A stretch of 64,000 nucleotides of DNA from the NCBI GenBank assembly GCA_024704765.1, contig JAKMXF010000003.1, positions 124,001 through 188,000 on the forward strand. Reading direction: 5' to 3'. Made by a program: the position numbers and the translations under genes. How positions within the stretch are numbered: position 1 is the stretch's first letter; each line of letters begins with the position of its first letter. The notes under the pieces are model-generated. The model was not told where the DNA came from. It ran no database searches and worked only from the letters and a program-made list of their open reading frames with translations. Source of the DNA: Oopsacas minuta. Taxonomy: Eukaryota > Animalia > Porifera. Positions 2,207 to 32,866 of this stretch are shown piece after piece.

Positions 2207-3946
2207 ATGAGAAGATGTGTGAAAACACTTCATGGTCACATATCTCATACTCGATCAGCTGATCAACTAAACAGTCGTGTGTCTCCACAACACCGACACA
2301 TATCAAACACTTATTCCATCATTACTACTGATTACGCGTATGAAACATTTTCCCCTAGTGTACGTATAGGAAAGGGTGCTACTAGGGAAGTAGGGATGGA
2401 TTTTGTGAACAAAGGTGTGAAGAGAGTTCTCCTATTCACTGATAAGAATTTGATTAAGCTTCTTCCCTTCAAAGCAACAGCTGATGCTCTCAGAGCTGAT
2501 AATGTAGAGTTTGATGTGTTCAGTGAGGTGAGGGATATATCTTAACTTTGAATTATTGTAATTTAATAGGAATACATGAATGTCAGTTTATAGGTACGAA
2601 TAGAGCCTACAGAGAAGAGCTTTAGAGAAGCTATACACAGAGCTCAGATGGGACAATATGAAGGGTTCCTGGCAGTAGGAGGAGGTTCTGTTATGGATAC
2701 AGCTAAAGTAGCTAGATTATTTGACGCCTATAGAGATAGACAACTGATAGATTTCATACCCGAACCAATAGGATTGGGGGAACATATTTCCCGCCCTTTA
2801 AAACCGCTCATCTGCATTCCAACAACTTCTAGTGGTAGCGAAGTAACTGGGAATGCGACTTTCTATTTATCATCAGAGAATAGTACATGCTCAATTTCAA
2901 GTCAAGCACTATGTCCTAGCCTAGCAATAGTAGATCCAATTAATAAATTCCAAATGCCTAAGAACGTTGCTATATTCACAGGATTAGGTGTGTTATGTAG
3001 AGCTCTGGAGGCGTACACAGCCCTCCCTCATGACATGAGATCTCCGACACCTAGTGATCCTAGGCATAGATCGATGGATCAAGGGAGTTCTCCGATGTCT
3101 GATATAGCTGTTGTACAAACCTTGAGGTGAGTTTTCTTATTTTGACACCGCCATAGACTGTAATTCAGATCTTGGCAGCTTGCCTGCAATAAGTGAACTA
3201 TCACTCCCCGTTATATTGAAGCAATTATCATGGTCCCTTGAGCTTCGATATGACAGGTGTTAAGATTAAATTCATTCCTAGGTTAATCGACAGGTACTTT
3301 CTCCCCTCAGTAGAATCGATAGATGATACACTAGCTAAGTCACAAATGAGTTTAGCTTCAGTAATAAAGGGGGCAGGATTCAGTAACGCGGGTGTACATA
3401 TATGTCACGCACTCTCCTACGCTATTTCCTCTAAAGTTATTGACTATAATCCTGACGGGTATCCTACGGATTATCCTCTGATACCTCATGGTCTGTCTGC
3501 TATTATCACAGCTCCTGCGGTCTTCTCTGAGATAGGATATGTATCACCTGATAGATGTATGTACTTAGCTCAAATACTCGGTAAGATTGTATTAACTGCT
3601 TAATACTAGAACTTCTGTATTGGTGGAAGTTTGCTGGATAAAGAGTATGAAATTTTCGTATTCTTTATCCTTGATAAGTTATACTATTTCTACAGGAGCT
3701 AATACAGGTAATGTAAAGCGATTAGAAGCAGGGAGATGTCTAGCAGGCCGTCTATGCTACTACATGAAGAGACTGGGTATACCTAATGGACTCTCTGGTC
3801 TAGGATTTACAGAGGACGATATTCCTGAAATAATAGAGGAAACTCAGAAAATTATCAGATTAACTTGTCTTAGTCCTATTCCTGTATGTGATACACTGTT
3901 AGAAGGAATCCTACACAAATCTCTTAGAATATATGATTCATTTTAA
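2207..3946 (+). CDS. ADHFE1: Hydroxyacid-oxoacid transhydrogenase paralogue A (iron-ADH family), 4 exons, divergent active site
   Basis: Exons about 2207-2527, 2594-3126, 3282-3580 and 3696-3946 splice in frame at GT-AG sites. Motifs TTDYAYE, AVGGGSVMDTAK, GVHICHAL, LIPHGLS; GVLCR replaces canonical DVLCH. Confidence 0.9.
2324..2731. repeat. 408-bp inverted repeat arm (partner 32294-32701)
   Basis: Base-by-base comparison with the reverse complement of 32294-32701 showed one mismatch (G2651 vs A), and the 66-bp intron is identical. Confidence 0.92.
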
Positions 3947-4123
3947 TAGTTTTCACTTAGAAATGATTAAATATTTGATTTCCGAGTTTTCAAATCTAAA
4001 TACAGTTAAGGGACAATCATTACCCCCCGGGCGAATTTTATTTAATACGTATGTTATGTGAATTATTTGGGATTTTGGGACCTGACCTAACTCAATAGAT
4101 AAGTTGTATAATTATACAAACAG

Positions 4124-4576
4124 TCAAACAATCTGAGAATCATTCTCATTAAGTAATTCAATTTGTTGAGGTGTCAGTGCTTTAGGTATCAATCCGATAT
4201 TCCTCGCCTTCTTAACTTCTTCTCTGAGCTTCGCTTGCATTTTCTTGCAAATACCGCTCTCATGTCTATCGATAATTCTACCTGTTGATGTAATGAATTG
4301 GCTAATAAGTAACACGTCTCTGTATGTGAATTCATCTAATCCCCGCCAGCATAATTGACAGCCTGGCCTCTTGAATACGTTACCGTCCTCTTCATATATT
4401 CCAGTAATTTTCTCTCTTACTAGCTTAATAGGGTCAGCACAATCTATAGGTTCACGATTGAATATTTGTGGCATACCTCGTTTCTCGTTTGGATCGAATT
4501 TCCATCTTCTCTGAGCTGAGATTCGAGGCAGAGATAATGTGTGTTTTGTAAGAGATCGGATTCCAGTTAATAACAT
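4124..4576 (-). CDS. MRPS18C: Mitochondrial ribosomal protein bS18m family, single exon
   Basis: CQLC...FTYRDVLLISQFITSTGRIIDRHESGICKKMQAKLREEVKKARNIGLIP is an S18 domain, preceded by a basic presequence-like N-terminus. The A/B/C subtype is uncertain. Confidence 0.8.
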   Translation of the reverse strand: MLLTGIRSLTKHTLSLPRISAQRRWKFDPNEKRGMPQIFNREPIDCADPIKLVREKITGIYEEDGNVFKRPGCQLCWRGLDEFTYRDVLLISQFITSTGRIIDRHESGICKKMQAKLREEVKKARNIGLIPKALTPQQIELLNENDSQIV

Positions 4577-4977
4577 ATCTTATACAAAATGAGTAAATTA
4601 TAAACTAGCGAGAGAGCATTTGACAGGGGACAGCTGTAATTACCAAGGAAAGGCCCCAAAATTACAATCTACACTGCGTCCATGACTTGTTAAGTGTACA
4701 TACACAAATGGGGCCTCTGGAAACGGAGGGGATAAATAGAGCGGATTCCCAGTCCCATACGTATGAACCTCAATAACGCTGAATTTGGCAGAAATGGGGT
4801 AGCATTTTCAGAGTCCCTTTCAAATAATAAAATAAACAATCAGCTACTTTCATGTAAATTATATCATTTCAATAATCAAAGTAAAATAGTCCGTAAATAT
4901 TCTATACGAATATTGGTATAAGAATTACAGTATTATGAATTTAAAATAACATAGGACTGATGTGAATGCATCGGAGA

Positions 4978-7900
4978 TCAATTTGATTTGGGAATTTTGT
5001 CTGCTGGTAAGTAGAAATCGTCTGTGCTTCCAAGAGTAGCTAAAGCATTATAATGTCTATCGTCTTCAGCAGATATGCTAATGATACGTTCAGGGGGGTA
5101 TTCACCTTGTGGATAATAGGTAAGAAAATCTTCCTTACCGAATGAGGAAATACGAGCTACTTTGATTTGTAAGTCTAGAGTGAAACCAAGCAGGAACATC
5201 TCAACCTAAAATAGTAACATGGAGTTAAATATGTGAGTTAACGGGCGAAAACCCGATGGAAATGTAAGTTTGGAAGTCAAACAAATTCCAGTGATATAAT
5301 AGCTGGTTAATACAAATATGTTACAATTCCATTGCAAGAAATGCTATCACAACATTATGTGTATTTGTGAAATAGCTAAGACATATCATGGTTGCTAACA
5401 TGTATCAAAAAATGGTAACTGAGAAATTACAGTAATCAGTCAAAGATTACACTAGTTTGTGTGTTACAAATATAAATCCCGGTCCCTATCCTTGAGAGTT
5501 CGAACTCTTCAGTAACCTCGCCCCTGGGGCGTGTTCATTAATACATATACAGTGTATGAATAGTTGAATAATTGTCCTTACACTGAAAAACTCGAGAAAA
5601 AAGTTTCTATTATCAATTCTTTAATATTTACTTACCATTTCTAGTCCACCAGAATCTCCAACATGGTTCAAATGATTAACGAGAAAATCTTCCAAATTCA
5701 TCGAATCTTCTCTAATGAAAAGGAAAAACATAGATTCAGGTACTTCTCCACCCTGAGAGTATATCTCCCAATATTTAGCTAACTCTATGAACATATAGAA
5801 CTTGAGTGCTTCCATAAGTGAGAAATCAAATATTTCCTTTTGCGTGTTGAGTTTACTGTATATGTATATCATACGGTTAATAGGCTCCCAACCTCTTACG
5901 TGATCAACCTACACAAACAAATTATAATTAGCACCAGAATAATCGGGTATTAGACAAATAAGCTAGTGAAACTCGCTCAAGCTCAAACACTCGGATAAGA
6001 GATACCCCTTCGGGAAACCAAAATCAGTAAATGCCAAGGTTGCAACCGAATAGTTCAATATCCGGTTACCAAGGGAATATCAGTATCCTGTATCCGGTTA
6101 CCAAGGGAATATAAGCATCCTGCATTCGGTTGCTATAAATATTAGGCTAAGCAACTATTCATGAATACTGATATTCGGTTCGATCGGTTTCAACCTTGGT
6201 AAATACGTACGTCTTATCCGAATACGGTAAATAAATACAAGACACCAGAGTAAGAATAAGGGTGATAGAAGTTATAGAGGAAGAGAATGTCGTACATATC
6301 AACCACCCAGTAAATAGCGAGTAGAAGATAAAATGATAATAAATCTCATCAGTAGTTAAGGAGCTAACAAAGTACAAATATTGTTTACCTCAAAAGCTAG
6401 ATTATCAATACACATCTCCAACACATCCTTCGTCTCTCCAAGTTTTTGAAATGAGGGTTTATTAGCAAATGACCATTTACTCAGAAATGGGTACTTCTCC
6501 ATCATAGGAGCAACGATCTATAATTAATAAGAGAGGGTCAGATAGAGCAATTTCTGGGAATAAAACGTAATTACCTGTCTGGCTTCGATTGGAGGTTTCA
6601 TATTGGCAAGAAAAGAACAAACATTGAAGTCTCGCACACAGAATGTTTGGAATAAAGTAGAACGAACAGCACAGTAGTTATCACCACGTATAGACATCAA
6701 GTGTGTATAATCCATCATCTCTAACTCATGATATCCCTATAGTATACATAAATAGCTACAGTAAACTCCGGTTATATAGAAATACCCGCTTTTATCGATT
6801 CTTAAATGGTACAAATATGGTCTCAAACCGTCAAAGTAACACATATTCCATCGGTTATAACGAATAAATGATCGCAGTCCCTTAAGCTTAGATATAGCGG
6901 GAGGTGTCTGTATATAGGAATTGCTTTAGCAAATAATCTTAGAATTCAAATAGCAAAAGAATACTCACATTTCTAACTCGTTTCGCATTGTCACTTGTTC
7001 CAATCCATTCCCTGGCTATATAATCACTGAATGTAATTGGGGAGTCTACGCTTCTTTGATGCAAATGAGTTTGTGTAGTGTCAAGGAGAACCTCTGAAGG
7101 AATAGGAGTAGTGTTGTTTTCATACCGATCAGTAACAAAATCGCCCTCATTTTTAGATATATTTTGTGGGACTATAGAGTCTTCATTCAGGGGGACAGCA
7201 TCATTGCCCTGTGGTTGATTTTGAACCTCATCGAAAGGTACTTGAGTAGTAGAAATTGTATTATTTTGTGAATGAATACTGAGACAATTAGATTCTATGA
7301 TGATAGTGTCGTGATCCATTTGTGCTGGGAGAGATGTACTTGGAGAAAAAGCTTGTGGAAGTTCAGGATTGCAACCAATATTTGTAAGATCAATATCTAG
7401 ATCCGTATTGTGTTCAGGGAGAGTTACAAAACTGTCAGAGGTTTGGAGAGGGGTCTGTTCAGGTGTCTATAGGCAAAATTAAATAAATCGACCCTTGCTA
7501 GCGTAGCAACTAGATGTGACATAGGAATTAGAAAATAGCTACATACGTAGTTAATACAATTAACTTGAGTGAATGACTTATTAATTAATGACACATTCAA
7601 TGATTAGACACAGCAAGCCTTATGACTAATAATTAAATATTAATTAGTTTCGAAGTAATTTCGGGTCTTACGTAATGCCTGAAATATGGAAACTTAAAGA
7701 AAACAAATTACTACAAAGTTATAACCTCCATTTTAGGAATGTGTATTATATAACTCACATTTCCGATAGAAGATATCAGTAGAGAATCTGGATAAGACGA
7801 TAGTAACTGTTGTTGTTCTTGTGTTTGTTGTTTATCAGTATGAATAGCTTCCTGTAACAATTGATAGTCTGCCGTATTTTTGGGATCATACAGAAATGTT

Positions 7901-10900
7901 GGGGGCTCCAATAAAGATAAGGGAGACATAGTATCAACTTCTTCATTGCCATTAGTAGTAACAGATAAATCGTCCATTTTTTGAGACGACGTGTCGATAG
8001 ATTGATAATCAGTTTCCGAATTATTAGCGGTTTGATATTCAGCCGTGTGTGTGGGAGAAGGGGTACAATCTGGAACTAATGTATCATTCTCGCTTTTATA
8101 TATATGGCGTTGGTCAATGCTTAATCTTTCTGTCACGTCGATCTCACCAATATTTGATCCGGTTTGTACTGAAGATTGTCCTGGAAACGAAACAGAAGAA
8201 TCGGAATTTTCAAAATGGGTCACTCCATTATCTACATGTGGTTCTGTCATCTTACTCTCAACATGGGTATCATCCGGTGCCAAGGAATGGTCTGACCTCT
8301 CTTCAGTAGAGCTATTAGCCATATTTTCAGTTTTCTCGTGAATTGTCCCCGTTATAGGATTAACAATCAAATCTATTCTATTAGGGGGACCGTCAAGAGT
8401 AAGCCCAGGTATGACGTCAGGTTTTTGAGGGCTAGCAGCAACGATATCTGGAATGTGTTGAATATTCGAAGGAGAATCCTCTATTATTGAACTATGTGTA
8501 AGTGATGGTAATGAATTCTTAGTCATCAGATCAGTTGTATTGCTAGAACCAACTGAAACTGAATCTAAAGATGGTGTTAGAATATATCTAGGACCATCTT
8601 GATATCTATCTCTCACTTCGTCGCTAACAATTGGTATACATATACTTTTATCTGAGTCTTGGTCATTCATAGAATCGGAAGGAAGTTTACGTCGAACAAA
8701 GGTCTTCTCAGTTTCATGATTTGGGTAGGATTTGTGGCTGCTAGAGATCTCTACCTCGGAAGGCATACTGCTCTTATCGCTCACTATAGAATATGGAAAT
8801 GTAGGTATACATGTAAATCAGGAGAAGTAGAGAGAAGATTATAGCAATACATTAGCAAATTGATGGGAGGTAGATATAAGAATGTCTTGCCTACTATGGC
8901 GAAACCTCCACAAACGGCCCAAAATACTACCCAGTTCCCCATTCTTGCTAAATTCCACAGTTCATTTGTATGAGACGAGGTACCATGAATTCGCTCTATA
9001 TATTTTCTCTCCGTTTCTACGTTTGTGGAGGTATCACTGCCATAGGAGGGAAAATTCGCTTTTCGGCAGGTTTTTGTAAGACAACAATCAACATAAACAC
9101 GAAAAGGTGAGACAATTGACATAGTTACACCAAATTTTATCATGGCTGTGCGAAGGAAAATGAAGATTAAGAACTATACAGTATAAATACATATAGAATG
9201 TAATTGAGTTCTATTAATAGTAACACTATGGCAACTATTGAGCACAAATATATCCATAGTTATGTACGAATAAATAATGACGTCTGATTACCTTATAAGG
9301 AAACAGGATAGACGCAATGGTATTTACATTCTTGTAATTTGGAATTTTACAAATTAGTGCGGTATTATGAATTATATTTTAAAGTCGAGCACTATTCTCT
9401 ACAGAACTTACAATTCGATCCTTCGTTTCTTTCTCCAATCTGCATTTCCTGGGAACCTAGATTATTTATGTTCTCAGTGTCCTGACGGACTTTACGTAAA
9501 CTCTCTTCTAAGTTCAAGTCGTTCCGAGATTCAATGGAATTAGTAACGATGATTTCAGAGTGTCTCAAGTCTTCTAGGGTCTGTTTTTCAGTAAATTTGA
9601 AATTGTCACCAATTTTAACAACTGTAGGGCGTTGAGAAGGACACATACTATGATCCTATTTAAGATTAAAAATAGAAACATAATTCGTAGGGATGTATTA
9701 AATTGTCACCTCCAAATTGGGACGATTTAAGGGTGAATTATTGGAATTATCAACATTTGAATACAGTGGATTCCGGTTATAAGAACATGTATGCTACTCA
9801 CAAGGGTGTTCTTATAACCAGCATCCATTAGGAACAATCATACTACTTACTAGTAATGGCGAGTTAGTAGTTATCTTCTCTTGCGATTGCGAGTAGGGAG
9901 ACACACAGTGAGGTAAATCATTTGATTCATCAAATGGCTGGGGCTTAGGAGATGGTAAAGTTCTTGTACGAGGAATAGGAATCAATGGATAGAGACTAGT
10001 CTTTATTATTTCTCCTGTAGTATTTCGTCTGGAAAATCCCTAAATTGTATGTTTGTAAGCGAACTGAATAAATCCAATTACTACGGAGATTCATATACAT
10101 TTTCAGTGAAGATAACTTAATCTCTCAAGTAATATAATTCTATAAATACTTACCCATTGTCCTGACTCTAATTGGGAATTTGGAGGAGCGAGTTGTGTTA
10201 TGGGTCCTCTAGATGCCGACTAGTAGATAGATAGAGAGATAGATAGATAGGCTAGACCAGACTAGACTAGATTAGACTTACCGTCGCAGATTCAAAAAAT
10301 TGTCCCGGTTCTTGGGTGGGGAAAGAAGAATCAGGAGAACGAACATCAGTATTTTTTAATAGCTAAACGAAAAAACAAAAACACATAATATATCAAATAA
10401 ATATTAAACACATTACGTGGACCCCTCCCATAACTGCAATACAAATTTTGAGACTCTATGGACCCGGTACTGTCGTCCGTAACCGTTCTATTATTGTATA
10501 AAGATATTACCTGTTCAGTCTGTGATGCTCCTCTTATATATATTTTTGATGACGATGTGATCTTGGGGGTACCTGGATTAGGAACATCAGGGTATAACAT
10601 TTTAACTGTCTCTCCTGATTCAAGTCGGTTACTCTTTTGTGATCCTAAAACACAATTAAACCAATATTCCAATAGAGTATAATTAATAGTATGGAATTAC
10701 CTGAGCAAGTTCCAGGATTGGGTTCAGCTCCTCTACTAAGTAAAAGATAAAACAGATGTTAAACACAGAACAAAGATTGTTAATATTTGAAAAAAGATAA
10801 ATGGTAAAGGGAATAATATGAAATAAAAATATCCGACAACTAACCTCTCTACATCTTCCGTTACCTGTGGAAAATACAAATATTTAATAATTGCAAATAA

Positions 10901-11994
10901 AATACGATAAAATTCACAGTTAAATATTAATTAATATGAAATTATACAATAGATTATGCGATGGTTATATTACTACAACGTGACATACGTTATGTATATA
11001 ATAATAATGTGGCTTACAAGTTGAAGAATTCGTATAATTGCAGATAATGAAAATAAGTCAAATTATGATTCTATCTGTTGTAAGGAAAATTGGACCGTGT
11101 TGAGGCAAATGTCTGCCTACATTTTCCATATGCGATCTGAAACACGAATTGATAAACCATATTCTGTTAGGGGTTACTCACCATTTTATCAGGAATAATT
11201 TTCCTACTAACAAGAAAAGTTGTGCACTTCATAATAGGTTTGAAGCAAATTCGAAATAGCACTGTACACGTCCAACGCATAACTTGAAACCCATAATAGA
11301 TCAACACCGACATTTTGAAAACACGATTAAAGAATAAACAAATAACAATTCTATTGAAATAGTGTATTAGTAATTGTATTTGTGTTGGGCAGATAATAAT
11401 ACCATAATTACACGCAAGTTCATTGGTAAAGGAAATAGGCTAATAGAAGTGTTACTATATTGAAAATATATGTAATATTGTATATTTGCACATTCCTGAA
11501 GAAATGCTATTAACTTCTAATAGGCAGAAGATCAATTGAATTATTATTAGTATTTGTTGGGTTTGTTACCATATGTCTGATTATAATCTAATTAGTAAGC
11601 TCTACTAGTGTAATAGTTCGATTCGTCAAATGAATATGCATAATTTTCAACTTTGTAAGATCTAAATCAGCTGTTCCCAACCTGTTAGGGCATCATGGAC
11701 CCCTTGGTGATGCACGGACGGCAGCTACCCCCCTACATGATCTCAAAATTTGTATAGTAGTATAAGGAAGGGTCTCCATAAATGTGGGACAGGTGAAATG
11801 GTTGGGAAACGCTGATCTAACTATTTGATAGAATTAGTGGTTGGGGATATGACAACTAGTTAACCATTTACCTTGTCTTCGGTTGGCTGAGCTCTAGGAG
11901 ATATCATTTTATAACAAATCAACACAGCAGTTGTTACAACTGCCACCGCAGAAACAAAAATATTCACAAAATTATGAGCAAGTACTCGTACCAT
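4978..11994 (-). CDS. OTULIN: OTULIN/FAM105-family deubiquitinase with long N-terminal low-complexity region and N-terminal hydrophobic anchor (about 14 exons, roughly 1050 aa)
   Basis: C-terminal exons encode EWIGTSDNA...GYHEL, IRGDNYCAVRSTLFQ (catalytic Cys), LMEALKF, NHLNHVGDSGGLEM/VEMFLL and SAEDDRHYNAL (His/Asn). Upstream exons (11994-11872, about 10864-10845, about 10737-10703, 10614-10511, about 10365-10285, about 10210-10145, about 10040-9850, about 9655-9413, 8783-about 7758, about 7467-6970) join with consistent phases. The domain call is firm; the 5' model is inferred. Confidence 0.8.
6759..6910. mobile_element. MITE family B (TA-flanked, TIR like CAGTCAACTCCCGTTATA; pogo/Tigger-like), intronic
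   Basis: TA|CAGTAAACTCCGGTTATATA...GATATAGCGGGAGGTGTCTG|TA; core CTTAAATTGTACAAATATGGTCACAAACCG shared with other copies. Confidence 0.8.
8896..9039. mobile_element. MITE family D (TIR like CAGTGTAACCTCCACAAACGG), intronic
   Basis: AAACCTCCACAAACG...CGTTTGTGGAGGTATCACTG inverted ends; related sequence near 4650-4810, 17837-17975, 20930-21000, 38272-38358 and 63100. Confidence 0.6.
10221..10280. repeat. GATA/TAGAC microsatellite in an intron
   Basis: tagatagatagagagatagatagatag...ctagactagattagact. Confidence 0.8.
11668..11814. mobile_element. hAT-type MITE family C with 8-bp target site duplication
   Basis: CAGCTGTTCCCAACC...GGTTGGGAAACGCTG flanked by ATCTAAAT / ATCTAACT (7/8 match). Confidence 0.8.
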
Positions 11995-14556
11995 AATGAA
12001 AGAATAACAACCAGAATTGAGTACTAAAAATAGATGCAGGGCTCTAATACAAGAATAAAATTCAAACTCCATTTTATAACAAAGATATTTACAACGATTT
12101 TAGCCTCAAATCTATACAAAGACTATTAATATACTGTGAGAACTTAATGGATCATGGATGGTAATATAGTGATTCAATTTCAAATTCCTTATGTAATTTT
12201 CGTAACTAGTCTAGCGCAATATTATATAACAAGTTCAATTGTCATGTGGATCTCCATAGCAACCATCAGTATATGAAGGTATGTGTTTAATTATAAATTT
12301 GGATAGAGAGATGATGAAATATGGAAAAAGCAAGTTAAGGTTTTAGGAGAATGTTTGCACTTCTAAATTACATCTATTCAAAATCCCAACAATATCTTAC
12401 ACAATCAGAAATGTAAATGATTTGTATTAAACCGATAACCCCTCTGACTAGTTACCTCCCTCGCTAATGGGTGTAGCCAAATACCAACAGGGTAACAAGA
12501 ATCCTGGAGGCAAATTTGAAATCATGATTAATCATTTTTGGAACGGTGCTAAGAATTAATGAAAACCCCACTTCGGTTACAATTGCTTTCAAAGCGTATT
12601 TCCCAATATTATAAAAAGTATTTGGGGAAGTATAAATCAGTTAGCATGAGCATCCCTCCTGAATGCTTAGCACATATATTTCCTATACAAGTTAAGTTCG
12701 TTTGTATCATCATTGTGGGTCAAATCATTCCATTGAATTTTGATGAATTACAACAAGTACTGAGCTCAGTGTTCTTGTAAATACAATTGTAATAGCCACA
12801 AGGTTTACCTTAATACTTCCTAATGATATAGGGAAGTATAATATGATTCTCAGGGATATAAGCATATTATTATTCTAAAAAAATAGGTGTCAATTCGGGT
12901 CTTTGGGAGGCGGGGGGGGGGGGCAGTTTGGCACCTAACTTGGTATTAAGCCAGAGGAAACTAAAACTTCATTGGCTTCATGCGTATATAACATTCCAAT
13001 GTTGATGCCCGAAATTATATATCGCTGTTACTGACATTCATTTGTCCTCGCTTAGGGTGTTATGTGTTAATAGGTAATAATTGTCACCGATAAAGTGATG
13101 ATAATAATGTCCAAAAGTTATTTACAGGCATAAGTGGCAATATTCTCAGAAATGTCTTACCTTTGGAACTGGGTCTTCATTTTGTCTCCCTTTTTTACAA
13201 TAACACCAAAGTAAAGCCGCGATGATACATAGAGCAACTATAATCGCTATTCCGGTGGGTATTAATGAGTAGAAGTAGAGATCTGAATTTTCTAAAATGA
13301 TAAACCAAATGAATAACGAGCCTTACATTAGGTTACATTGGTATTCGCCTAATAGCAAGTTCATACAATAGTAAGGGAAATGTTGCTAATAGGTGAAGTC
13401 CACTGTATATAAGTTCCCCTTCTAAACGGGAGAACAGAGAGTTCGCTATTAGCTATTATCCTCTACCTCCTGGAAACTTGCTAAACATTGGCGAACACTC
13501 CTGTAGATCAATACAACGAAGATACTCATTGGAATGTGGGCGAACGCACGTGCGTGAATTGCGGACTCACTTTTATAATCACAATCCTCCAGTATACACC
13601 ATCTGATTAAAATCAAACTTGACAATATCTCACTCATTTCACTCATTCCGTAATACACAATTGACTAATTCTGTAATATAGTATTGAATTGTATACAAAC
13701 TGAAATAACATACTATCCCCAATCAAAGATCACTTATATACCTATACACAGCTAATGAGCTCTTTACTATTGAAAATTTAGTGAATCATATATTATTAGC
13801 GATAATTAATGGAAATTTGGCCAAAAATACGAATTCCAATTAATTAATATTAATATTAACTTACCAAAAGCATTCATTCGTAAGTATGAGTATCAATAGA
13901 CGAGTATTCAAGAGGTGAATAGGAAATCTAAGTAAGATTGAATAGCTACAAAGAAGGTTATATAAATATCAGAGGAAACAACGAGTATGAAACACCTCCT
14001 CGATGGTCACATGTGTGATCCTGCCTTGATAAATACAGCATTCTTAGCAAAGAAAATAGGGAAATAATATTTTCCAATACTTACTATATATTTATACATA
14101 ATACAAAACTGCTAGAGTGTAAATACATATTCATAAAATAGGATCTAGTGTCTAACCAGATCTGGAAAGTTCAGAAAGTGTCCTCGTATGCACTTACTGA
14201 ACGAAATATTGGGCTAGGGATGATCGTTTGTACCTAGCAATATCGTTAAAATTGTACATTTTGTCTTTATAAGCATTTTGAGCACCAAATTTGTAAGTTA
14301 TACAATCTAAGGAGCATCGTTGCCCCAGAATTTCTGTGGGGTATCCCCGTGGTTATATCACACTTCTACAAAGTACAAATGGAAGACGTGCCAAAGGGAA
14401 ACGAAGTCTATAAGTTCTCGTTACTGTGAGGATACCTGATGACCTAGTATTGTAAATATATATAATTCTGACATATAACAAATGAATCACTCAATAATTG
14501 ACCTAAATATGTAAGACTCAGTTACTATTTACTACAAAATGCACAATGAATATCTT

Positions 14557-17482: not shown

Positions 17483-17781
17483 GTTGGTGTATTGCTATGT
17501 TATTCTAATATTATATCAGTATATTTGATTATTAATAGTTGCCTCCAGTCCGGACTGAAGCAGGAAGTTGGTAAGAAACTTTACCCGAGGTATGATAGGG
17601 ACCATACTGATAATTCTGATTTCCTAGCCTCAGTCTGGACTGGACAACAGGTAACAAGCGACCCCAAGGATTAGTAAACTCAAAATGGAATAGAAAATTC
17701 AATTGAATAAACCACGAATAAATACGTTACTAATCGTACTAGCTATACCTACTGGGAGTTTTATGTAAGAGCTCTTTTGTA

Positions 17782-18621: not shown

Positions 18622-19125
18622 ATCTCAGCTAATTAACTAATTGAACTACATAAGTATTCGCTATAAATAGAAACAAATGGCTGAGAGGTGATAACTATAA
18701 GTAATGACGGAAAAGCCCCCGCTCCTGCTTCTATTAGTGCTACTTACATGACGCATTACATAGCAAATTCTTGTGATTAATGTTGGTGTATAAATTATCT
18801 AATTATGCCTGGTGTCAATTCACTCCTGTTTGGACCGGGTTTGCCCCCCCGCTTGTCCATTGGACAGCACTATCATATATGAATTGCTCTGAATAATAAA
18901 ATTACCCTTAATTAGTTATAAGGAATGCCCGATGTATAAACGATAGATCTTTCTCATCAATCCTCCAAATAATTCTCCAGATCCAGCACTTCAATATATT
19001 TCCTGTAATCTGCCCTTTATAATAGTTATACAGGACTGAATGTCCGAATTATTTATCGCAACAGTTTACATAACAAAATAATAATAGTTTAATATCAATC
19101 AAAGTTTACAAATTTCTAAGAAAGT

Positions 19126-20841: not shown

Positions 20842-21174
20842 TAAATAACAAATTCTACTAAAATTGATTCCTCAGAAAAAACATATATACAAATGTGTGA
20901 AAACGTTTTTACAGTATAACATATGACATACACAAATGGGGTGTCAGGGACGCCCAAAAATGTTACCCCGTTTGTGGAGATTACATTGTATAATTGTTGA
21001 TACATTATTACTACGTCCAGAGGCGAAATGCGGGTAAATCTGGTGGCTGAGATGGCACAATTTGTAAGGCAAGTTCTCAAAAATTGTAATCCAAGAGACA
21101 TATAATACCTCAAGTAGAACATTGAATTAATAGTTTGTGATTAGAATTAATATATTACACTCAGCAGTAAATTC

Positions 21175-23432: not shown

Positions 23433-23559
23433 GTTGCTAGGCATTTGCACATAAATATTTAAATAATTATGTAACGAAAATTATAAGATAAGACTTAAAC
23501 TACACAATCAACTTCAATAGGAAATCACTACACAATACTCTAGTATGTTTTTACGTTGG

Positions 23560-26500
23560 CTAGCTTGTTAGATCTTTGTTCTTCTGTAATATTACGAATC
23601 CTTCTAGAAGAGGAGTTATGGGTATATCTAGAAATGAATATATCCCTCATAAAATTTCGCGGAGATATATTGGCCTCAAAATATTATACTTGCTCATATT
23701 AACTGCCTAGTTAATAAATATTGAATTTCTCTAAGAATATAGCTTACATTCATTCGTAGCTAACTCAGCTCTCTCCCCATAAGATAACAATACAGGAGTA
23801 GAATGAGTCTGAAACCCTGTTATAGTCTTTGGCTTTCCTGCTTGTCCTACTACATCTACTGCTTGACCTACACGTACACTCACAGACAGAGGCTTGAGGT
23901 CTGTATCTAGTGTTACCAGCATACGAGGCTGTATTGCTAAGGCTATGCAGTAGAGAAGGTAGCAAGGGTTGGAGTGCCCGATTAATACTAAACAAATTCA
24001 CAAGTAAACTGGAGCAACTTTTCTATAGCAGCCACAGGAACATGCTAAGTTATTGTCTCACCCCTTCTACATTCCAAATATCAACTCAGGTAACTAGGGA
24101 TTTAATTTATCTTTGGAACGTCAAGGGTGCTAATTGACACCCCCAGACCCAGGAAGTACAACACTTACTATTTTTAACATCCATAGCAGCTACCAATACA
24201 GTCACCAGACTACCGACAGCAACAGGAGTAAACAATCCTCTGTCAGAATGATAAGGATTTAGTGTAAGGGTACCTTTACCGAGATGTATTAGACCTTGTG
24301 CTAGTCTTACTATATAGAGATTATTACTATCCTTCTGGTAATAAGTAGCTAGTTGTTTTAGCATGTTAACTAGCCTCGAGTTGTTAGTCCCTAATAAATA
24401 TATATATATGGAATAGATGGAACAATGAAACCTCCACAAACTGTTTGTCCCGTATTGACCCTTTTAATTATAGTTTATTGTATTACAACAATACTCTTAC
24501 CAGCTCCAACAATCCCCATTGCTAGTATAGCATTGTGTGCTGTCTCAGCATCATTATCATGTGATAGCTTAGATAGAGCATCAAGTACAGGAAGCTGTGG
24601 ATTAGAGGCTGATATGAGGGCTAATGCTAGAGGTACTGATCTCTTTATTACGCTATCTCCATACTGCAACTATAATATATACAGAATTAAGTCAGTCAAC
24701 TCCCGGTATATCTAACACGGATATATAGAAATACCCGCTTATGTCTGAGCCTTAAATTGTCCAAATATGGTCACAAACAGCTGAAGTACCATATATTCCA
24801 TAGGTTATATCGAGTAATTATCGCGGGTACTTGAGCTTCGATATAACGAGAGTAGACTGTACGTATGTGAATTCACATAACACTTAATAATCAAGTACAA
24901 TAAATAGAATGACATACACAGATTATCACGAATATTTTCCATGTTTACAACTCATATAATGCCATTAAAACTACTCACAACATATCGCTATAGACTGCTA
25001 TTACAACATACATACAGACATAACCATATGCTACAGGTGAGAAATGTCGCTAACAATGAGAATAAACTTGTAGGCTGTAGTGACCTTACAAACATGAGGA
25101 ATATCGGGATACTAGCACACATCGACGCGGGTAAAACAAGCACAACAGAATGCATGCTGTTCCACGCGGGTGTTGTGAAGAAAATAGGCCGGATAGATGA
25201 CGGGGACACTCGTATGGATTTCATGAAACAGGAACGAGAGAGAGGGATAACTATAAATGCGGCGAACATCGCTTTCAACTGGTTAAATCGGACAGTTAAT
25301 TTGATCGATACACCAGGCCATGTTGATTTTAACTTTGAAGTAGAAAGATGTTTGCATGTGTTGGACAGTGCGGTGCTAGTGCTAGACGGGACCGAGGGTG
25401 TACAACCACAGACTATATCCATCAACAAACAAATGACAGAATGGACACTACCTAGACTAATATATACAAACAAAATGGACAGAAAAAACGCAGACTTCGA
25501 TCGTTCAATAAAAGCACTTAGAAAAGAATTGGAAGTTAATCCGGTTGTATATACACGACCGGTTTATATCAATGGAATGTTCAGAGGTGTTGTTGACCTA
25601 ATTTCAATGATTGTAAGGATTCACACAAAAAATAATATACAATGTTTCCCTGTAAACGGAGAGAATGGAGGGTTTAATGAACAGCTGATCGAGATGGGAG
25701 TAAATCGTGAAAACTTGGAAATAATAATCCATTCAAGAACCAAATTGATTGAAGAGTTAGTCAGTTTTGATGAGAATTTGTTAGAAGAATATTTCGAAGG
25801 CAAAACACCGTCACCAGAAAATCTCAAACGTCTACTAAGATCTTGCTGTGTAAATCAACAGGTCTCCCCTGTGCTATGTGGTAGTGCAGTAACCAACATA
25901 GGAATAGACTTGTTGCTAAACGCAATCGTTGAATATCTTCCCTCACCGCTAGATAGGATTGAAAGTCATTTCCCAGTCAATTTCCACCATGATGCAAATT
26001 CCCCGTTGATAGCTTATGCATTTAAAGTAATACAAGATAGAAACAGAGGCTCACTCGTGTATCTACGTGTATATTCAGGGGTGTTAAAATCTCATTCACA
26101 CATTTATAGACTAGGGGATAGAGGCAGTGAGAAGATTAATCGTTTATTGCTCAGTCAAGCCGGGGATTTGAAAGAAATCCGCGCAGTAGGACCTGGAAAT
26201 ATCGGCGTGGCAGTTGGCCTGAAGGAGACACAAACAGGTGACGTCATCACGAGTGACGAAACTATTCTAACAGAAATAACTAAACAAATAGAAACGGCGA
26301 ATGATTGTGTTACAAAACGAACTGCAAGCCCCAGTCAAACCTGGCTTACTAATTTAATAAAGCTTAACGTGCCTGATGCAGTATTCTACTGTACACTATA
26401 TGTAGACAGTAAGGAGGAAGAGAGAGAGCTAGTGAAAGCCCTGAACCAGCTGACTACAGAGGATCCCAGTCTTAGATACAAGATAGATCCGAATAATGAG

Positions 26501-29500
26501 GACTTAGTCGTGTCAGGCATGGGGGACCTGCATCTACAGATTCTTATAGACCGATTGAAACACGAATACAGGATTATAGTCAAACTAGGGAAACTGAGTA
26601 TCGCTTATCAAGAAGTCCCAACTATTGTAAGTAAGGAAGTATACGAGACGACAAGCACTATGAGTGGGAGAGAGCAACATGTAGAAATAGGCCTGAGAGT
26701 TATACCCGGTGGACAGAACATTAAAGTTGTCAACCGATTAGGAAACGAGGTTGTTATAAGCCGCGACCAACTCAAAGCAATACAGAATGCAGTCAGGGCA
26801 GTTTGCGTAGGAGGTGGCCCGTTAATACATGGTCCTGTTACAGAATTATCAGTCGAACTGACTGACTTTACCTGTGAAGAAGTGACGTCACTCAATATTG
26901 TGAGTTATGCGACAAGAGAATGTTTGACTAAAGCACTACGTAATAGTGAACTAAGGTTAAGTGAACCTGTTATGAAAGTGGAAATTAAACTATCAGAAGA
27001 ATACGTGGAAGCTGTACTGGCGGATTTAGCTAATAACAGACGAGGTATAGTTAAGAGAGTTCTGACAGACGCTAGGGCCAGCTGTTTAGAGGCGGAGGTA
27101 CCGCTAGAACATTTACTGCAGTATAGCAATGTAGTGAGGGGGCTTACGTCAGGATATGGAGAGTATTCAAGCAGATTCCTAACCTACAGACAGGTTGCTA
27201 ACGAGCACCAGAAGACTATTATAGATAGATATAAAGGATATTAATTCGTTATTATCTGATATTGTAACTTAGCTTAGAAATAATATGTACTCAAAGTAGG
27301 ATAGAGTTCAATTGTTCTTCCTAGAGCGGCCGAAACGCGGTATCAATCGGTTCCCAACCCAGGTTCCATGGATTCCTTAGTGGTCTACGAACGACAGTAG
27401 GGGGTCTACAGAGCGTCTTTTAAATGGGGAATGGGGGTCCATGTGTGAACAGTTGGGAACTGCTGGGTTAGGAATTTAATTATATATGAACCTTACCAAA
27501 TGCGAGAAAGTTCTGAGTGACATTTCAGCTCCTATCTCCTCCCCCATGGCTACTAACGCTATGCCCAACACAGTAATAGCTTGATGAGCTCCTGGCTCAT
27601 GGAGAGCTCCAGCTACAGCTGTAGGGTCTTTTAAGTTTTCCTTCCCTTTCGTATCTTTCTCTTTCTCATCTTCCTCAGAGAAGAACTCACTGGCTTTATG
27701 CAGAAGAGACTGTATTTTCAATACATTACCAGTTCCTAATATTAAGATAATAAGGCATTTGAATACGGGCGACTTAATTATGACGTCATGAATATTACCT
27801 GCATAAGCACACACATCTAATAGAATAACACCAAAATCCTTGAGATGAGCAGGTAGACTATCAAATGCATTAGCTATGTCATTAGCTGCTTTCTGCTTAC
27901 CAAGGAATATTAAACCAACTGCCAATATAATGAATCTAAATACATTTTTTTGTTAAAAACCTATATTATAATGGTATAGAATATGTCAGTGTGTGATGGA
28001 ATCTTATGACAGGCTTCAATTTAATAAGAATTAAGTTTCCAACCTGTTGTATGTAGATTTGACATTGTATCCTTCCTTACTGAAAATAGTTAACAGCTTT
28101 AAAGCTAGTTCAGCATTACAAGATCCCAAAGCAATAAATCCTATTGACAGAGCTGTAACACTGATAACCTCACTGGTTATTAGTTTATCATTTGCATTAG
28201 ATACTTTATCTGTGAATACTTCTGTTAACATCACAATTAAGTCTTCACGGCATGATCCAGCATATGCTAATCCTAATCTAATAGAAATACAATGCGAGCT
28301 CGTTAATAAGAACACAAACAGATTAATAGTGGACTATGTGAAGAGGTTCTTGTCGTTATAACTCACCCTAGAATAGCAGCTATCTTCATTTTGATATGAC
28401 TAACATTAGCATCTGATACAAACTCAGATAGAATACCCATAGCAGGATCACACTCATTCCTTATACCACAATTTACTATACCGGTTGCTAAGAGAGCTCC
28501 TGCCTACAGAAAATACGTCAAAATATAACAGCTGATCGTAAGCATAGGAAGCACCATAAGCGCCGACACAAGGAGTATTTCACGGGTAACATCGAAGTAA
28601 TTATCGCGGTTCCTTGAGCATCGATATAACGAGAGTTAACTGTACAATATATCATAGCTTACTTTAATTTCAATATCTTGTGAATATATATACTTGTCAA
28701 TATGTGTCAGACCTGTATCAACATCCCATAACATTATAAGTCCCAGAGAAGCTACAGCGCTAATCATTCCGTTATCTTTAACTTTACCAAGCCAAGCTTG
28801 ATTATCTGCATCCATTGTAACTTTATCTTTACCAAAAGCACAATTAACAAATCCATTAACGAACGTGGAAGCTAGGAACATTTTGCTTTGGTCTTGTGTA
28901 GCAGTTCTAGGAGGATCTGAGTGATTCTTCATGACGTCATCTGGTAGTTTTGGTTCAACGATATCTAACTGGAGAGATGGAATGTATCAATTCTTAATTG
29001 TAATTGGCTGAAGATATGTACAGTGGAACATCGTTAATACGTATTTCCTGATAAGAACTTATTCAATTGGTATTACACCGGATAAAGCGAACAGATTTGA
29101 CCGTCTGTTAGTATTCCTATTAACGAGGCTACACTGTATGCGGAACTTACTTCTCTAGCTAATGCCAGGAAATGTTGATTTAATTGAGAATTAGAAATAA
29201 TCTCTCGTAACAACTCATTACTACTCTCCATCTCATCTTCTGGTATTTCTAAGAATACTTGCTGTCTGCCTAGCATAAAGCAGAGCTGTTTCTTCAATAA
29301 TCTACGAGATGAATCGAATTAAAATGTAGTTTGGTAGGAAATTGGAAAGTGTTCCCATCAAATGCCTATTTTCCCATCCATGTATCCAATAGATTAACTC
29401 ACTCATCGTTACAAGAGAAGAATATATCTTTAATGAGTTTGAGATCATTCAGCTGCATTGCTAGTTTCATAGCTGCAGCTAGCTTATTATACTTCCTGAA

Positions 29501-30615: not shown

Positions 30616-30903
30616 TCCACGCTATGTCTACTAATTCATACAAAAACATCACCAAATTAAGAGATGGAAATTTGGTAGAATTCGAGTCAAAACATGTTGT
30701 AACGGATTGACTGCCAGAAGTTACCGTTAAGGAAGTAATGTGTAGAAATTACTACCCATCAGTTTAATGTATGAAATTCGATAAAAAAGTGAACAAAAAA
30801 GTTATACAAAAGAATTTGATACGAAATAGTAAGTGAATCGCTAAAACTTTCCAAAAATCTCGGAAAAAGTTTCGTAGCTAATTAACATAAGATAAGTGCT
30901 CTA

Positions 30904-32866
30904 TCAGTTGTATACAGTCATTGAATTGAGTAGTATCCTCTCTAGAAGGGAGGAGGTTACTTTATTGGGGTATAGTCTAGTTATTCTTTCCTGTGGTAAG
31001 GTCTTCTCTACAAGCATAGGGATATCTTCAGGAGAGAATCCTAGAGACTTGAGACCGTTAGGAATCTCTAGACGGTTCATTATCTTACAGAGCTGGTCTG
31101 ACAGACAACGACCTGCATCTTCTGTTTTGATGTTATTCGTGTTTGCACCTGTAAATATATAACACATGAAATAAAAGAAGAGGCCTTGGGGGAGAATTAT
31201 GTGCCGAATATTACAGTCAACTTCCGTTATGTCGAAGCTAAAGGGACCGTGATAATCACTTCGATCTAAGCGGAGTACGGTGTAACAGATTAAAAGTATG
31301 CTACTTTGACGGTTGGTGACCATATTTGTACAATTTCAGACTTCAATATAGCGGCTCTTTCGATATATCCGTGTTTGACATATCGGGAGTTGACTGTATT
31401 TAATGAACAACAAGTTGTAGTATTAGTATGAATGAGATTGTCTGGTTGTTCAGGTTTCATAGTATACAACAAGTCATTACCTATTAACCCAGCTAGCTGA
31501 ATACATCTATCTGGAGCTACAAGTGCAACCTCCTTAAATACAGCAGGAGCTGTCATGACAACAGAAAGGCCGTGTGGAATGATCGGATGATCATTAGAAT
31601 AGTCAGATGGACAATAATCCTTTACAGAGCCAGATAATGCAAAAGATATAGCATGGCATAGATGTACACCAGAGCTACTGAATCCTATTCCTGCTAGTAG
31701 TGATGCAAAACTCATCTGTGCGGATGATTCTTGATCAAACAGACTCTCAATTGAACCCAGAAAATTATCATTGATAATCCTACAGGAAATATTTCAATAT
31801 AACATTAATGGATGGTTTTGAAATTTTGACGAGCAGTTTTTGTCGTCAAGGTAGAATGAGTTCGTATTTACGAGAGTCTACTATTGATAACTTACTTCAG
31901 AGTCTCAACAGCCCAAATATCAGATATAGGATTAGCTCCTTGATGTTGTGGTCTATGAAGAGGATTCAATGGCTTCGGTGATCTATTATCATAACGAATA
32001 TTAGTGAAAGATTCCAACGCATGACATAGCACATCAAATCCTGAGTATATAGCCACGTTCTTAGGCATTGATAGTGCATTCAGTGGATCTACTATAGCTA
32101 AATTAGCACATAGTGCTCTATTAGAAAATCCTGTCTTAGCATTTATTGATTCCATTTGGCAGATGGCTACTCCAGTAGTTTCGCTACCAGTTCCTGATGT
32201 TGTTGGAATACATATAAGAGGTTTTAACTGTTTGAAGATCGGTTCTCCTTTCCCAACAGGTTTATTTACGAAATCAAAGAAGTCCTTTTCTGGATAGGCG
32301 TCAAATAATCTAGCTACTTTAGCTGTATCCATAACAGAACCTCCTCCTACTGCCAGGAACCCTTCATATTGTCTCATCTGAGCTCTGTGTATAGCTTCTC
32401 TAAAGCTCTTCTCTGTAGGCTCTATTCGTACCTATAAACTGACATTCATGTATTCCTATTAAATTACAATAATTCAAAGTTAAGATATATCCCTCACCTC
32501 ACTGAACACATCAAACTCTACATTATCAGCTCTGAGAGCATCAGCTGTTGCTTTGAAGGGAAGAAGCTTAATCAAATTCTTATCAGTGAATAGGAGAACT
32601 CTCTTCACACCTTTGTTCACAAAATCCATCCCTACTTCCCTAGTAGCACCCTTTCCTATACGTACACTAGGGGAAAATGTTTCATACGCGTAATCAGTAG
32701 TGATTGAATCAGAAGAAGTTTGTCTATGTCTTGGAGGTATACTACTGTTGAGTATACCGGATGAGTGAGCAGGACATCTACAAGGGCTACCTGCTATAGC
32801 ATGTAATGTCTCTCTAACTATTTCTCTTCTGGATAGTTCTTTTATGATACGGACACCACGATTCAT
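30904..32866 (-). CDS. ADHFE1: Hydroxyacid-oxoacid transhydrogenase paralogue B, canonical active site, 4 exons
   Basis: Exons 32866-32498, 32431-31896, 31779-31481 and 31148-30904. CRCPAHS leader motif, IPTTSGTGSETTG, FDVLCHALESFT, GVHLCHAIS, IIPHGLS and TLPQERIT; same intron positions as paralogue A. Confidence 0.95.
31214..31396. mobile_element. MITE family B, in ADHFE1-B intron 3
   Basis: TA|CAGTCAACTTCCGTTATGTCG...CATATCGGGAGTTGACTG|TA. Confidence 0.85.
32294..32701. repeat. 408-bp inverted repeat arm (partner 2324-2731)
   Basis: Reverse complement of 2324-2731 with one mismatch. Confidence 0.92.

What the first reader, a model, noticed from the sequence alone, without database searches (positions are those of the whole stretch)
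2324..32701. Near-perfect 408-bp inverted identity between otherwise diverged ADHFE1 paralogues 29.6 kb apart
Seen: 2324-2731 and the reverse complement of 32294-32701 match at 407/408 positions, including the whole 66-bp intron 1. The sequence on both sides is clearly diverged at protein level, and the other introns are unrelated and carry different MITEs. Inference: recent ectopic gene conversion. A crossover in the tract would invert about 29.6 kb and swap the C-terminal catalytic halves (canonical vs degenerate) between the two N-termini. It would also move PSMD2...MRPS18 from the minus-strand array onto the end of the DHCR24 plus-strand array, leaving every gene still co-directional with an upstream run. 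This is a candidate flip-flop inversion polymorphism.
Basis: partly seen in the sequence, partly recalled or inferred. Interest (0 to 1): 0.75.

Follow-up and report, generated by a model that had tools for sequence, protein, structure and literature searches.

The report
Recurrent gene conversion between sponge ADHFE1 paralogues
Two old, tail-to-tail copies of a mitochondrial dehydrogenase gene in the glass sponge Oopsacas minuta share a 408-base patch because one copy keeps overwriting the other there, and related sponges show the same; this is real, repeated gene conversion, a familiar process, and nothing shows the proposed inversion.

Summary
Window 2324-2731 equals the reverse complement of 32294-32701 at 407/408 positions, including the whole 66-bp intron 1. 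The rest of the two four-exon Fe-ADH/ADHFE1 genes is 42-52% identical in protein, with saturated synonymous sites.

The genome is the glass sponge Oopsacas minuta. Gene B is canonical. Gene A has lost two metal ligands.

Gene conversion is supported, and it is not a single event:
- A dead 7.5-kb duplicate of the A region on another contig already has the B-like tract next to A-type sequence. It keeps an A-type codon where A and B are now identical. So the tract predates that duplicate, and B overwrote A again afterwards.
- In four unnamed related assemblies, A-type and B/C-type exon-2 ORFs on one contig are 92-100% identical before the motif ARLFD (97-100% in three) and diverge after it.
- Trees of the two parts conflict strongly (AU p 2.6e-7 and at most 1.5e-4).

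The inversion idea is untested. The repeats could mediate it, but no alternative junction exists in the assembly, and 5'/3' gene halves stay in parental combination in relatives.

The scan found two similar conversion patches elsewhere in this genome. This is an ordinary mechanism in a neat, long-lived example.

The parts
2324..2731 (+). Conversion tract, copy in gene A (end of exon 1, intron 1, start of exon 2)
   Evidence: 407/408 identical to rc of 32294-32701
32294..32701 (-). Conversion tract, copy in gene B
   Evidence: the single difference is at 32374 (A on the coding strand, Arg) vs 2651 (G, Gly). The Gly state is shared by paralogue C and the C41 fossil copy, so Arg is derived in B
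2207..3946 (+). Gene A, an ADHFE1-like Fe-ADH paralogue with a degenerate metal site. Exons 2207-2527, 2594-3126, 3282-3580, 3696-3946 (467 aa)
   Evidence: GT/AG splice sites and an open joined frame; Pfam PF00465 and PF25137 on exon ORFs; GLGVLCRALE where solved Fe-ADHs have D...H
30904..32866 (-). Gene B, the canonical ADHFE1-like paralogue. Exons 32498-32866, 31896-32431, 31481-31779, 30904-31148 (482 aa)
   Evidence: Pfam; GFDVLCHALE aligns with the D/H metal motif of solved Fe-ADHs
2528..2593 (+). Intron 1 of A (66 bp), identical to intron 1 of B (32432-32497)
   Evidence: intron 1 of paralogue C is 58 bp and not alignable
2732..32293 (.). The 29.6-kb interval between the inverted tracts, which a crossover would invert. 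It holds the A body, MRPS18, an OTULIN-like gene, GGA, Beclin, an EF-G-like gene (+), PSMD2 and the B body
   Evidence: Pfam on ORFs
2255..2323 (+). Eroded older edge: about 20 codons upstream of the tract that still resemble B/C-type sequence (SPQHRH shared with paralogue C)
   Evidence: tblastx 44% A vs B; C exon 1 translation

Best explanation
A and B are ancient paralogues of the mitochondrial hydroxyacid-oxoacid transhydrogenase gene (ADHFE1, Fe-ADH family) in the glass sponge Oopsacas minuta. They lie tail to tail, with 27 kb and at least seven other genes between their 3' ends. A 408-bp segment (end of exon 1, intron 1, start of exon 2; it encodes the first part of the NAD-binding domain, up to and including the GGGS motif) is kept nearly identical by repeated non-reciprocal intrachromosomal gene conversion. 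The rest of the genes has escaped homogenisation and diverged. A belongs to a conserved clade that has lost the His metal ligand, and in O. minuta the Asp ligand too.

Shown here:
- The tract is of B/C type.
- It already existed when a now-dead duplicate of the A region was made.
- A and B were homogenised again after that, with B as donor at the 3' edge.
- The same segment is homogenised within four related assemblies, with the same 3' limit (after ARLFD).

Inferred:
- The island of identity perpetuates itself, because strand invasion and heteroduplex extension need homology that exists only inside it.
- Its edges are held by the divergence, probably selected, of the flanking parts.
- The inverted orientation lets this continue without deleting the essential genes in between.
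For: Tract and flanks: (tract pS 0; flanks dS 0.9-1.6, 42-52% aa).

Genome identity: one search gives 61.46 Mb in 365 contigs. One search returns P0121, named O. minuta, on a 96,659-bp contig that matches C41. The genome paper PMC10280926 agrees.

B/C-type origin of the tract: paralogue C (G000:C166) is 76-77% nt identical to B both inside and outside the tract, but aligns to A only inside it. In the tract, A-C dN is 0.158 and B-C dN is 0.163, against A-C dN 0.35 after the tract.

Fossil copy: C41 holds a 7.5-kb duplicate of window 2563-10108 at about 94% identity, with stop codons in its MRPS18 and OTULIN-like parts. It carries the B-like tract contiguous with A-type post-tract sequence, differs at 7 of 169 tract positions, and keeps ACC (Thr, the A-type state in most relatives) where A and B both have GCC. 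With about 6% neutral divergence since that duplication (dS 0.058), about 9 differences are expected at the roughly 146 neutral tract sites of A vs B. None is seen (Poisson P about 1.5e-4).

Relatives: A-type and B/C-type exon-2 ORFs on the same contig (contig lengths 999377, 310587, 595985, 2021315) are 36/36, 35/36, 35/36 and 33/36 identical before ARLFD and 54-65% identical after it. Even the close pair 310587 / 595985 co-vary (QYDAFL in both paralogues of one, QYDGFL in both of the other). The post-tract tree gives an A-type clade with 100/98 support and rejects within-assembly clades (p-AU 1.7e-6, 1.5e-4, 1.6e-32). The tract tree groups by lineage and rejects A-type monophyly (p-AU 2.6e-7).
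Against: - No reads were available. The assembly is a SPAdes hybrid, scaffolded with SSPACE, then treated with Pilon and GapFiller. That pipeline could make near-identical repeats look more identical than they are, so 407/408 is an upper bound on identity.
- The cross-species evidence is protein-level only and covers only the exon-2 part of the tract (36 aligned residues).
- The groups for the AU tests were named after seeing the alignment.
- There is no GC-biased conversion signature (GC3 0.32 in the tract vs 0.28-0.30 after it).
Confidence: 0.85

Rival explanations
1. Flip-flop inversion. The 408-bp inverted repeats undergo crossovers that invert the 29.6-kb interval. Both orientations segregate, and the tract identity is a by-product of this exchange.
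For: The geometry is right: inverted repeats 407/408 identical, 29.4 kb apart. From general knowledge, not tested here: a 408-bp identical stretch is likely long enough for homologous exchange, and crossover between inverted repeats inverts rather than deletes.
Against: The whole assembly holds only four copies of the tract: A, B, paralogue C, and the dead C41 duplicate, whose tract joins A-type sequence in the parental arrangement. No contig carries a recombinant junction, and neither the DHCR24 side nor the B side has an alternative contig. In O. minuta and in two related assemblies the short A-type presequence sits with an A-type body (P0250 with P0245 on contig 7687), and the CRCPxHS-type presequence sits with B/C-type bodies (P0248 with P0132 on contig 1570907; O. 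minuta B and C). Frequent neutral crossovers would have shuffled these. The sample is small.
Confidence: 0.1
2. Assembly or polishing artefact. The true A copy differs from B, and the identical patch was created by graph collapse, Pilon or GapFiller.
For: The assembly pipeline was a de Bruijn hybrid assembly, then SSPACE, Pilon and GapFiller. Two other letter-perfect patches between linked paralogues were noted in the same assembly.
Against: An independent contig (C41) carries the same chimeric junction: B-like tract followed by A-type sequence. Independent assemblies of related sponges show the same homogenised segment in their paralogue pairs. The flanks are only about 60% identical, so mis-mapping could at most erase a few differences, not create the tract.
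Confidence: 0.04
3. One single recent conversion in O. minuta. The within-species identity in relatives reflects strong purifying selection on a conserved motif region, not conversion.
For: The exon-2 part of the tract is conserved (78-89% identity between species) and contains the GGGS nucleotide-binding motif.
Against: Constraint cannot produce lineage-specific substitutions shared by both paralogues of each assembly. The variable stretch reads MGQYEG, RGQYQG, LGQYDA, LGQYDG or RGQFDG by lineage. The tract alignment rejects A-type monophyly at p-AU 2.6e-7. Within O. minuta, the C41 fossil shows at least two events.
Confidence: 0.05

Closest known systems
Human RHD / RHCE
   Same: Two paralogues in opposite orientation with their 3' ends facing each other, separated by about 30 kb that contains another gene (TMEM50A). 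They undergo recurrent segmental gene conversion that blurs orthology between species (PMC4824203).
   Different: The RH genes are young and highly similar along their whole length. Here the paralogues are ancient (about 52% aa identity) and only one 408-bp island is still exchanged. One partner is a degenerate enzyme. The host is a sponge.
Interlocus gene conversion between linked paralogues in general (e.g. Caenorhabditis hsp16 / hsp70 inverted pairs, fog-2/ftr-1)
   Same: Short, sharply bounded identical tracts in otherwise diverged, closely linked duplicates, in direct or inverted orientation (review PMC3966223).
   Different: Here the same segment is homogenised in several related species, while the flanks form deep orthologous clades.
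Inverted-repeat-mediated inversion polymorphisms (e.g. human Xq28 FLNA-EMD, F8 intron 22; from general knowledge, not tested here)
   Same: Identical inverted repeats flank a gene-containing interval.
   Different: Those repeats are kilobases long and both orientations have been observed. Here the repeat is 408 bp and only one orientation is seen.
Other conversion patches in the O. minuta assembly (scan notes s1-221523, s1-266764)
   Same: Tracts of 324 bp and 234 bp, letter-perfect or nearly so, between diverged linked paralogues of the same genome. Earlier agents of this scan read them as ordinary gene conversion.
   Different: Different gene families. Those notes report no cross-species recurrence.

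Membership tests
Interlocus (ectopic) gene conversion tract | Sharply bounded segment of near-identity inside otherwise diverged paralogues | tested here: met
   407/408 identity against 57-60% nt identity on both sides
Interlocus (ectopic) gene conversion tract | Identity extends to neutral sites (intron, synonymous positions), so constraint cannot explain it | tested here: met
   Intron 1 is 66/66 identical; tract pS is 0 vs 0.52-0.66 in the flanks
Interlocus (ectopic) gene conversion tract | Phylogenetic incongruence between tract and flanks | tested here: met
   The post-tract tree gives an A-type clade with 100/98 support. The tract tree groups by lineage. AU tests reject the opposite topology in both partitions
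Interlocus (ectopic) gene conversion tract | Non-reciprocal transfer with an identifiable donor | tested here: inconclusive
   The tract is of B/C type, and the GCC vs ACC site points to B-to-A for the latest event. Reciprocity cannot be assessed from one assembly
Interlocus (ectopic) gene conversion tract | Both copies verified by reads with unique flanks | not testable with these tools
   No read data. The C41 copy gives indirect support for the 3' junction
Inverted-repeat (NAHR) inversion polymorphism | Highly identical inverted repeats flank the segment | tested here: met
Inverted-repeat (NAHR) inversion polymorphism | Both orientations, or recombinant junctions, are observed | tested here: not met
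   There are no recombinant junctions among the four tract copies of the assembly. A single collapsed assembly has little power to detect them
Inverted-repeat (NAHR) inversion polymorphism | 5' and 3' gene halves found in recombinant combination in relatives | tested here: not met
   Only parental combinations were found: contig 7687 (P0250 + P0245), contig 1570907 (P0248 + P0132), and O. minuta A, B and C. The sample is small
Fe-dependent alcohol dehydrogenase / ADHFE1 (HOT) | Fe-ADH N-terminal and C-terminal domains | tested here: met
   PF00465 (E 1e-20 to 1e-22) and PF25137 on exon ORFs of both genes. The closest named hits are hydroxyacid-oxoacid transhydrogenase
Fe-dependent alcohol dehydrogenase / ADHFE1 (HOT) | Asp and His metal ligands of the D-x-x-x-H motif | tested here: not met
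   This row is for gene A, which has G...R at these positions; A-type relatives have Q at the His position. Gene B keeps D...H, aligned to solved Fe-ADHs. So B is a full member and A is a degenerate member

The most novel reading that the evidence does not exclude
The 408-bp island is a long-lived, possibly selectively maintained shared module. A canonical ADHFE1 enzyme and its metal-site-degenerate paralogue would have kept an identical N-terminal nucleotide-binding segment, by continual conversion, since before the hexactinellid lineages sampled here diverged. One possible reason is that the two proteins must pair or be handled alike. The inverted arrangement would protect the essential genes between them and occasionally allow promoter and presequence swapping by inversion.
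Probability: 0.2. Interest if true: 0.55.

Novelty: new member of a known kind. Interest (0 to 1): 0.38.

Why it matters
This is a clean, datable example of partial concerted evolution in an early-branching animal. A fossil duplicate brackets two conversion events within one genome. Related glass sponges show that the same segment has been homogenised repeatedly while the rest of the genes formed deep orthologous clades.

It has three practical consequences:
- Exon-level trees of this family, and probably of other linked paralogues in this genome, will mislead orthology calls.
- The degenerate paralogue A is an old, conserved gene rather than a recent pseudogene.
- An annotated O. minuta 'protein' on contig C41 is part of a dead duplicate.

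It does not reveal a new mechanism.

Tried and rejected
- **C41 as an allelic haplotig.** I first read contig C41 as the second haplotype of the A region. I rejected this because its MRPS18 and OTULIN-like copies carry stops and frameshifts, transposable elements bound it on both sides, and no neighbouring region has a second contig. It is a dead partial duplicate.
- **Looking for an inverted junction.** I searched the whole assembly with the tract and with all three flanks. None was found.
- **Exon-1 search for the 5' boundary in relatives.** It returned only four hits, with no A/B pair from one assembly.
- **GC-biased conversion signature.** None was seen.
- **Naming the relatives.** The listing of cluster members gave no accessions.
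- **Joined models.** Every database search used single exon ORFs by reference. Joined coding sequences were built only inside local scripts, to fix frames, to place the exons of paralogue C and the C41 copy with a local tblastn, and to count substitutions.
- **Big protein search.** The search of protein representatives was not used, because the family was not in doubt.
Full report
**Observation**

The inverted-repeat scan reports arms 2321-2829 and 32196-32704 at 92%. The pairwise alignment shows that the core, 2324-2731 against the reverse complement of 32294-32701, is identical at 407 of 408 positions. The one difference is at 2651 (G) against 32374. Identity falls abruptly to about 60% on both sides.

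**What the genes are**

The assembly has 61,460,524 bases in 365 contigs, and the window is contig C3:124001-188000. A protein that NCBI names as Oopsacas minuta sits on a contig of 96,659 bp, the length of contig C41 of this assembly. The O. minuta genome paper reports 365 scaffolds and about 61 Mb (PMC10280926). So this is the glass sponge O. minuta and not human DNA.

Splice sites and reading frames give two four-exon genes:
- **Gene A**, + strand: exons 2207-2527, 2594-3126, 3282-3580, 3696-3946 (467 aa).
- **Gene B**, - strand: exons 32866-32498, 32431-31896, 31779-31481, 31148-30904 (482 aa).

Exon ORFs of both match Pfam Fe-ADH (PF00465) and ADH_Fe_C (PF25137). The nearest named relatives are hydroxyacid-oxoacid transhydrogenases, i.e. 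ADHFE1.

B has GFDVLCHALE. This aligns with the Asp/His metal motif of solved Fe-ADHs. A has GLGVLCRALE, so two ligands are lost.

The genes lie tail to tail. Between them are MRPS18, an OTULIN-like gene, GGA, Beclin, a + strand EF-G-like ORF and PSMD2.

All database searches were made exon by exon, by reference. Joined coding sequences were used only inside local scripts, for frames, exon placement and substitution counts.

**Size of the contrast between tract and flanks**

| Segment, A vs B | aa identity | nt identity | synonymous sites |
|---|---|---|---|
| Before the tract | 42% | 57% | pS 0.52 (dS 0.9) |
| Tract | 99% | 99.7% | pS 0 |
| After the tract | 52% | 60% | pS 0.66 (dS about 1.6) |

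Intron 1 (66 bp) is identical in A and B. Introns 2 and 3 differ in length and do not align, except for one 52-bp fragment of a common MITE family that lies in different introns. Constraint cannot explain identity at intron and synonymous sites.

**Origin of the tract**

A third paralogue, C (G000:C166, about 329290-331000), is 76-77% identical to B in DNA both inside and outside the tract. It aligns with A only inside the tract. In the tract, dN is 0.158 for A-C and 0.163 for B-C. After the tract, A-C dN is 0.35. So the shared sequence is of B/C type.

B-C synonymous divergence is lower in the tract (dS 0.49) than after it (1.17). This suggests that C took part in an older exchange.

About 20 codons upstream of the tract, A still resembles the B/C type (SPQHRH is shared with C). 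This looks like an eroded older edge.

**A fossil copy dates the events**

Contig C41 holds a copy of window 2563-10108 at about 94% identity. I first took it for the other haplotype. It is not, for four reasons:
- Its MRPS18 copy has an in-frame stop, and its OTULIN-like exons have stops and frameshifts.
- Its copy of A has lost about 30 in-frame bases that encode the conserved KPLICIPTT motif.
- Multi-copy transposable elements bound it on both sides.
- No adjacent region of the window has a second contig.

It is a dead partial duplicate.

The copy starts inside intron 1 and carries 169 bp of the tract, contiguous with A-type post-tract sequence. So A already had the B-like tract when the duplicate was made. 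This junction also comes from an independent contig.

It differs from A and B at 7 of the 169 positions. Of the six coding-base differences, five are derived changes in the dead copy (His to Cys, which takes two bases, Ala to Glu, and Val to Gly in or beside the GGGS motif). The sixth is ACC (Thr), the state of nearly all A-type orthologues, where A and B now both have GCC. So B overwrote A again after the duplication, reaching two codons further than before.

Neutral divergence between the duplicate and its parent is about 6% (dS 0.058). Without further conversion, A and B should then differ at about 9 of their roughly 146 neutral tract sites. They differ at none (Poisson P about 1.5e-4).

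**Related species**

The DHCR24 gene next to A has unnamed ENA relatives at 76-77% protein identity. All named animals are at 59% or less.

Searching with A's exon-2 ORF returned about twenty exon-2 ORFs from such assemblies. In four assemblies, an A-type ORF and a B/C-type ORF come from contigs of the same length:

| Contig length | ORF pair | Identity before ARLFD | Identity after ARLFD |
|---|---|---|---|
| 999377 | P0122 / P0126 | 36/36 | 61% |
| 310587 | P0124 / P0130 | 35/36 | 54% |
| 595985 | P0246 / P0242 | 35/36 | 58% |
| 2021315 | P0125 / P0129 | 33/36 | 65% |

Between lineages the same 36 residues are only 78-89% identical. The lineage-specific residues are shared by both paralogues of each assembly. 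Even the closely related 310587 and 595985 co-vary.

The two partitions give conflicting trees:
- **Post-tract part (134 columns):** an A-type clade with 100/98 support. Grouping paralogues by assembly is rejected (p-AU 1.7e-6, 1.5e-4, 1.6e-32).
- **Tract part:** sequences group by lineage. A-type monophyly is rejected (p-AU 2.6e-7).

The A-type clade shares the loss of the His ligand (Gln in relatives, Arg in O. minuta). So A is an old, conserved gene and not a recent pseudogene.

Caveats on this evidence:
- It is protein-level only.
- It covers only the exon-2 part of the tract.
- 'Same contig' is inferred from equal contig lengths.
- The groups were named after I had seen the alignment.

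**Mechanism**

The data fit partial concerted evolution. The two inverted, linked paralogues keep exchanging a short island of identity by non-reciprocal intrachromosomal conversion. Outside the island, divergence removes the homology that strand invasion and heteroduplex extension need, so the island perpetuates itself. Its 3' limit has stayed within two codons across lineages.

It is not resolved whether the island is a remnant that never escaped homogenisation after the duplication, or was created later by one conversion and then maintained. No A-type gene sampled has a 'native' tract, which favours the first view.

**The inversion proposal**

A crossover in the tract would invert 2732-32293 and would exchange promoters and presequences between the two gene bodies. 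Nothing here shows that this happens.
- The assembly has only four tract copies, and none is a recombinant junction.
- The short A-type presequence is found with an A-type body in O. minuta and on contig 7687 (P0250 with P0245).
- The conserved CRCPxHS-type presequence is found with B/C-type bodies (O. minuta B and C; P0248 with P0132 on contig 1570907).

Frequent fixed crossovers would have mixed these combinations. The sample is small, and a single collapsed assembly cannot show a polymorphism. The idea remains open but unsupported.

**Artefact**

The assembly is a SPAdes hybrid of Illumina and PacBio reads, scaffolded with SSPACE and then treated with Pilon and GapFiller. This could erase a few true differences between near-identical repeats, so 407/408 is an upper bound on identity. 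It cannot create a B-like tract inside flanks that are only 60% identical. The C41 junction and the independent assemblies of relatives argue that the chimeric structure is real.

**Comparison with known cases and verdict**

The closest analogue is human RHD/RHCE. Those genes have opposite orientation with 3' ends facing, lie about 30 kb apart with a gene in between, and undergo recurrent segmental conversion that blurs orthology (PMC4824203). Interlocus conversion between linked direct or inverted paralogues is well documented (PMC3966223). Earlier agents of this scan read two other short identical patches between linked paralogues of this same genome as ordinary conversion.

This finding is therefore a new member of a known kind. 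It stands out for the fossil copy that brackets two events and for the recurrence across hexactinellid lineages.

- The exon-1 search found too few relatives to test the 5' boundary.
- The big protein search was not used.

Noticed in passing
G000:C41:77000-83206 (L006 1-6207; L007 1-207): A dead 7.5-kb partial duplicate of window 2563-10108 (about 94% nt). It has a stop codon in the MRPS18 copy, stops and frameshifts in the OTULIN-like exons, and a deletion of about 30 in-frame bases in the ADHFE1 part, and it is bounded by TEs. NCBI's annotation nevertheless lists its ADHFE1 piece as a protein (P0121).
   Followed up: yes
Exon-2 ORFs of relatives (P0122-P0135, P0241-P0247), aligned to window 2594-3126: The His of the D-x-x-x-H metal motif has been replaced independently in several hexactinellid ADHFE1 clades. 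The A-type clade has Gln (Arg in O. minuta, which has also changed Asp to Gly). The b-type of contigs 310587/595985/17346 has Asn. The clade P0131/P0133/P0135 has Ser.
   Followed up: partly
G000:C166:329290-331003 (L005 5290-7003): A third, canonical ADHFE1 paralogue (C, 483 aa, 75% aa identity to B). Its synonymous divergence from B is lower in the tract region (dS 0.49) than after it (1.17), which suggests an older three-way exchange.
   Followed up: partly
window 10100-13940: A multi-copy transposable element inside the OTULIN-like gene region, with copies at about 90% identity on C363, C302, C55 and C52.
   Followed up: no
L007 208-3000 (G000:C41:83207 onward): A Tc1/mariner-like element and other repeats with dozens of copies at 85-94% identity across the assembly. 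They fill the rest of contig C41 to its end.
   Followed up: no
window 24941-27244 (+): An intronless 767-aa EF-G-like ORF (all EF-G domains in Pfam) on the + strand, inside an otherwise minus-strand gene block.
   Followed up: no
window 31212-31400 (intron 3 of B) and 3203-3254 (intron 2 of A): A MITE of about 190 bp with more than 40 copies genome-wide and about 15 fragments in the window. A 52-bp fragment of the same family lies in a different intron of A.
   Followed up: partly
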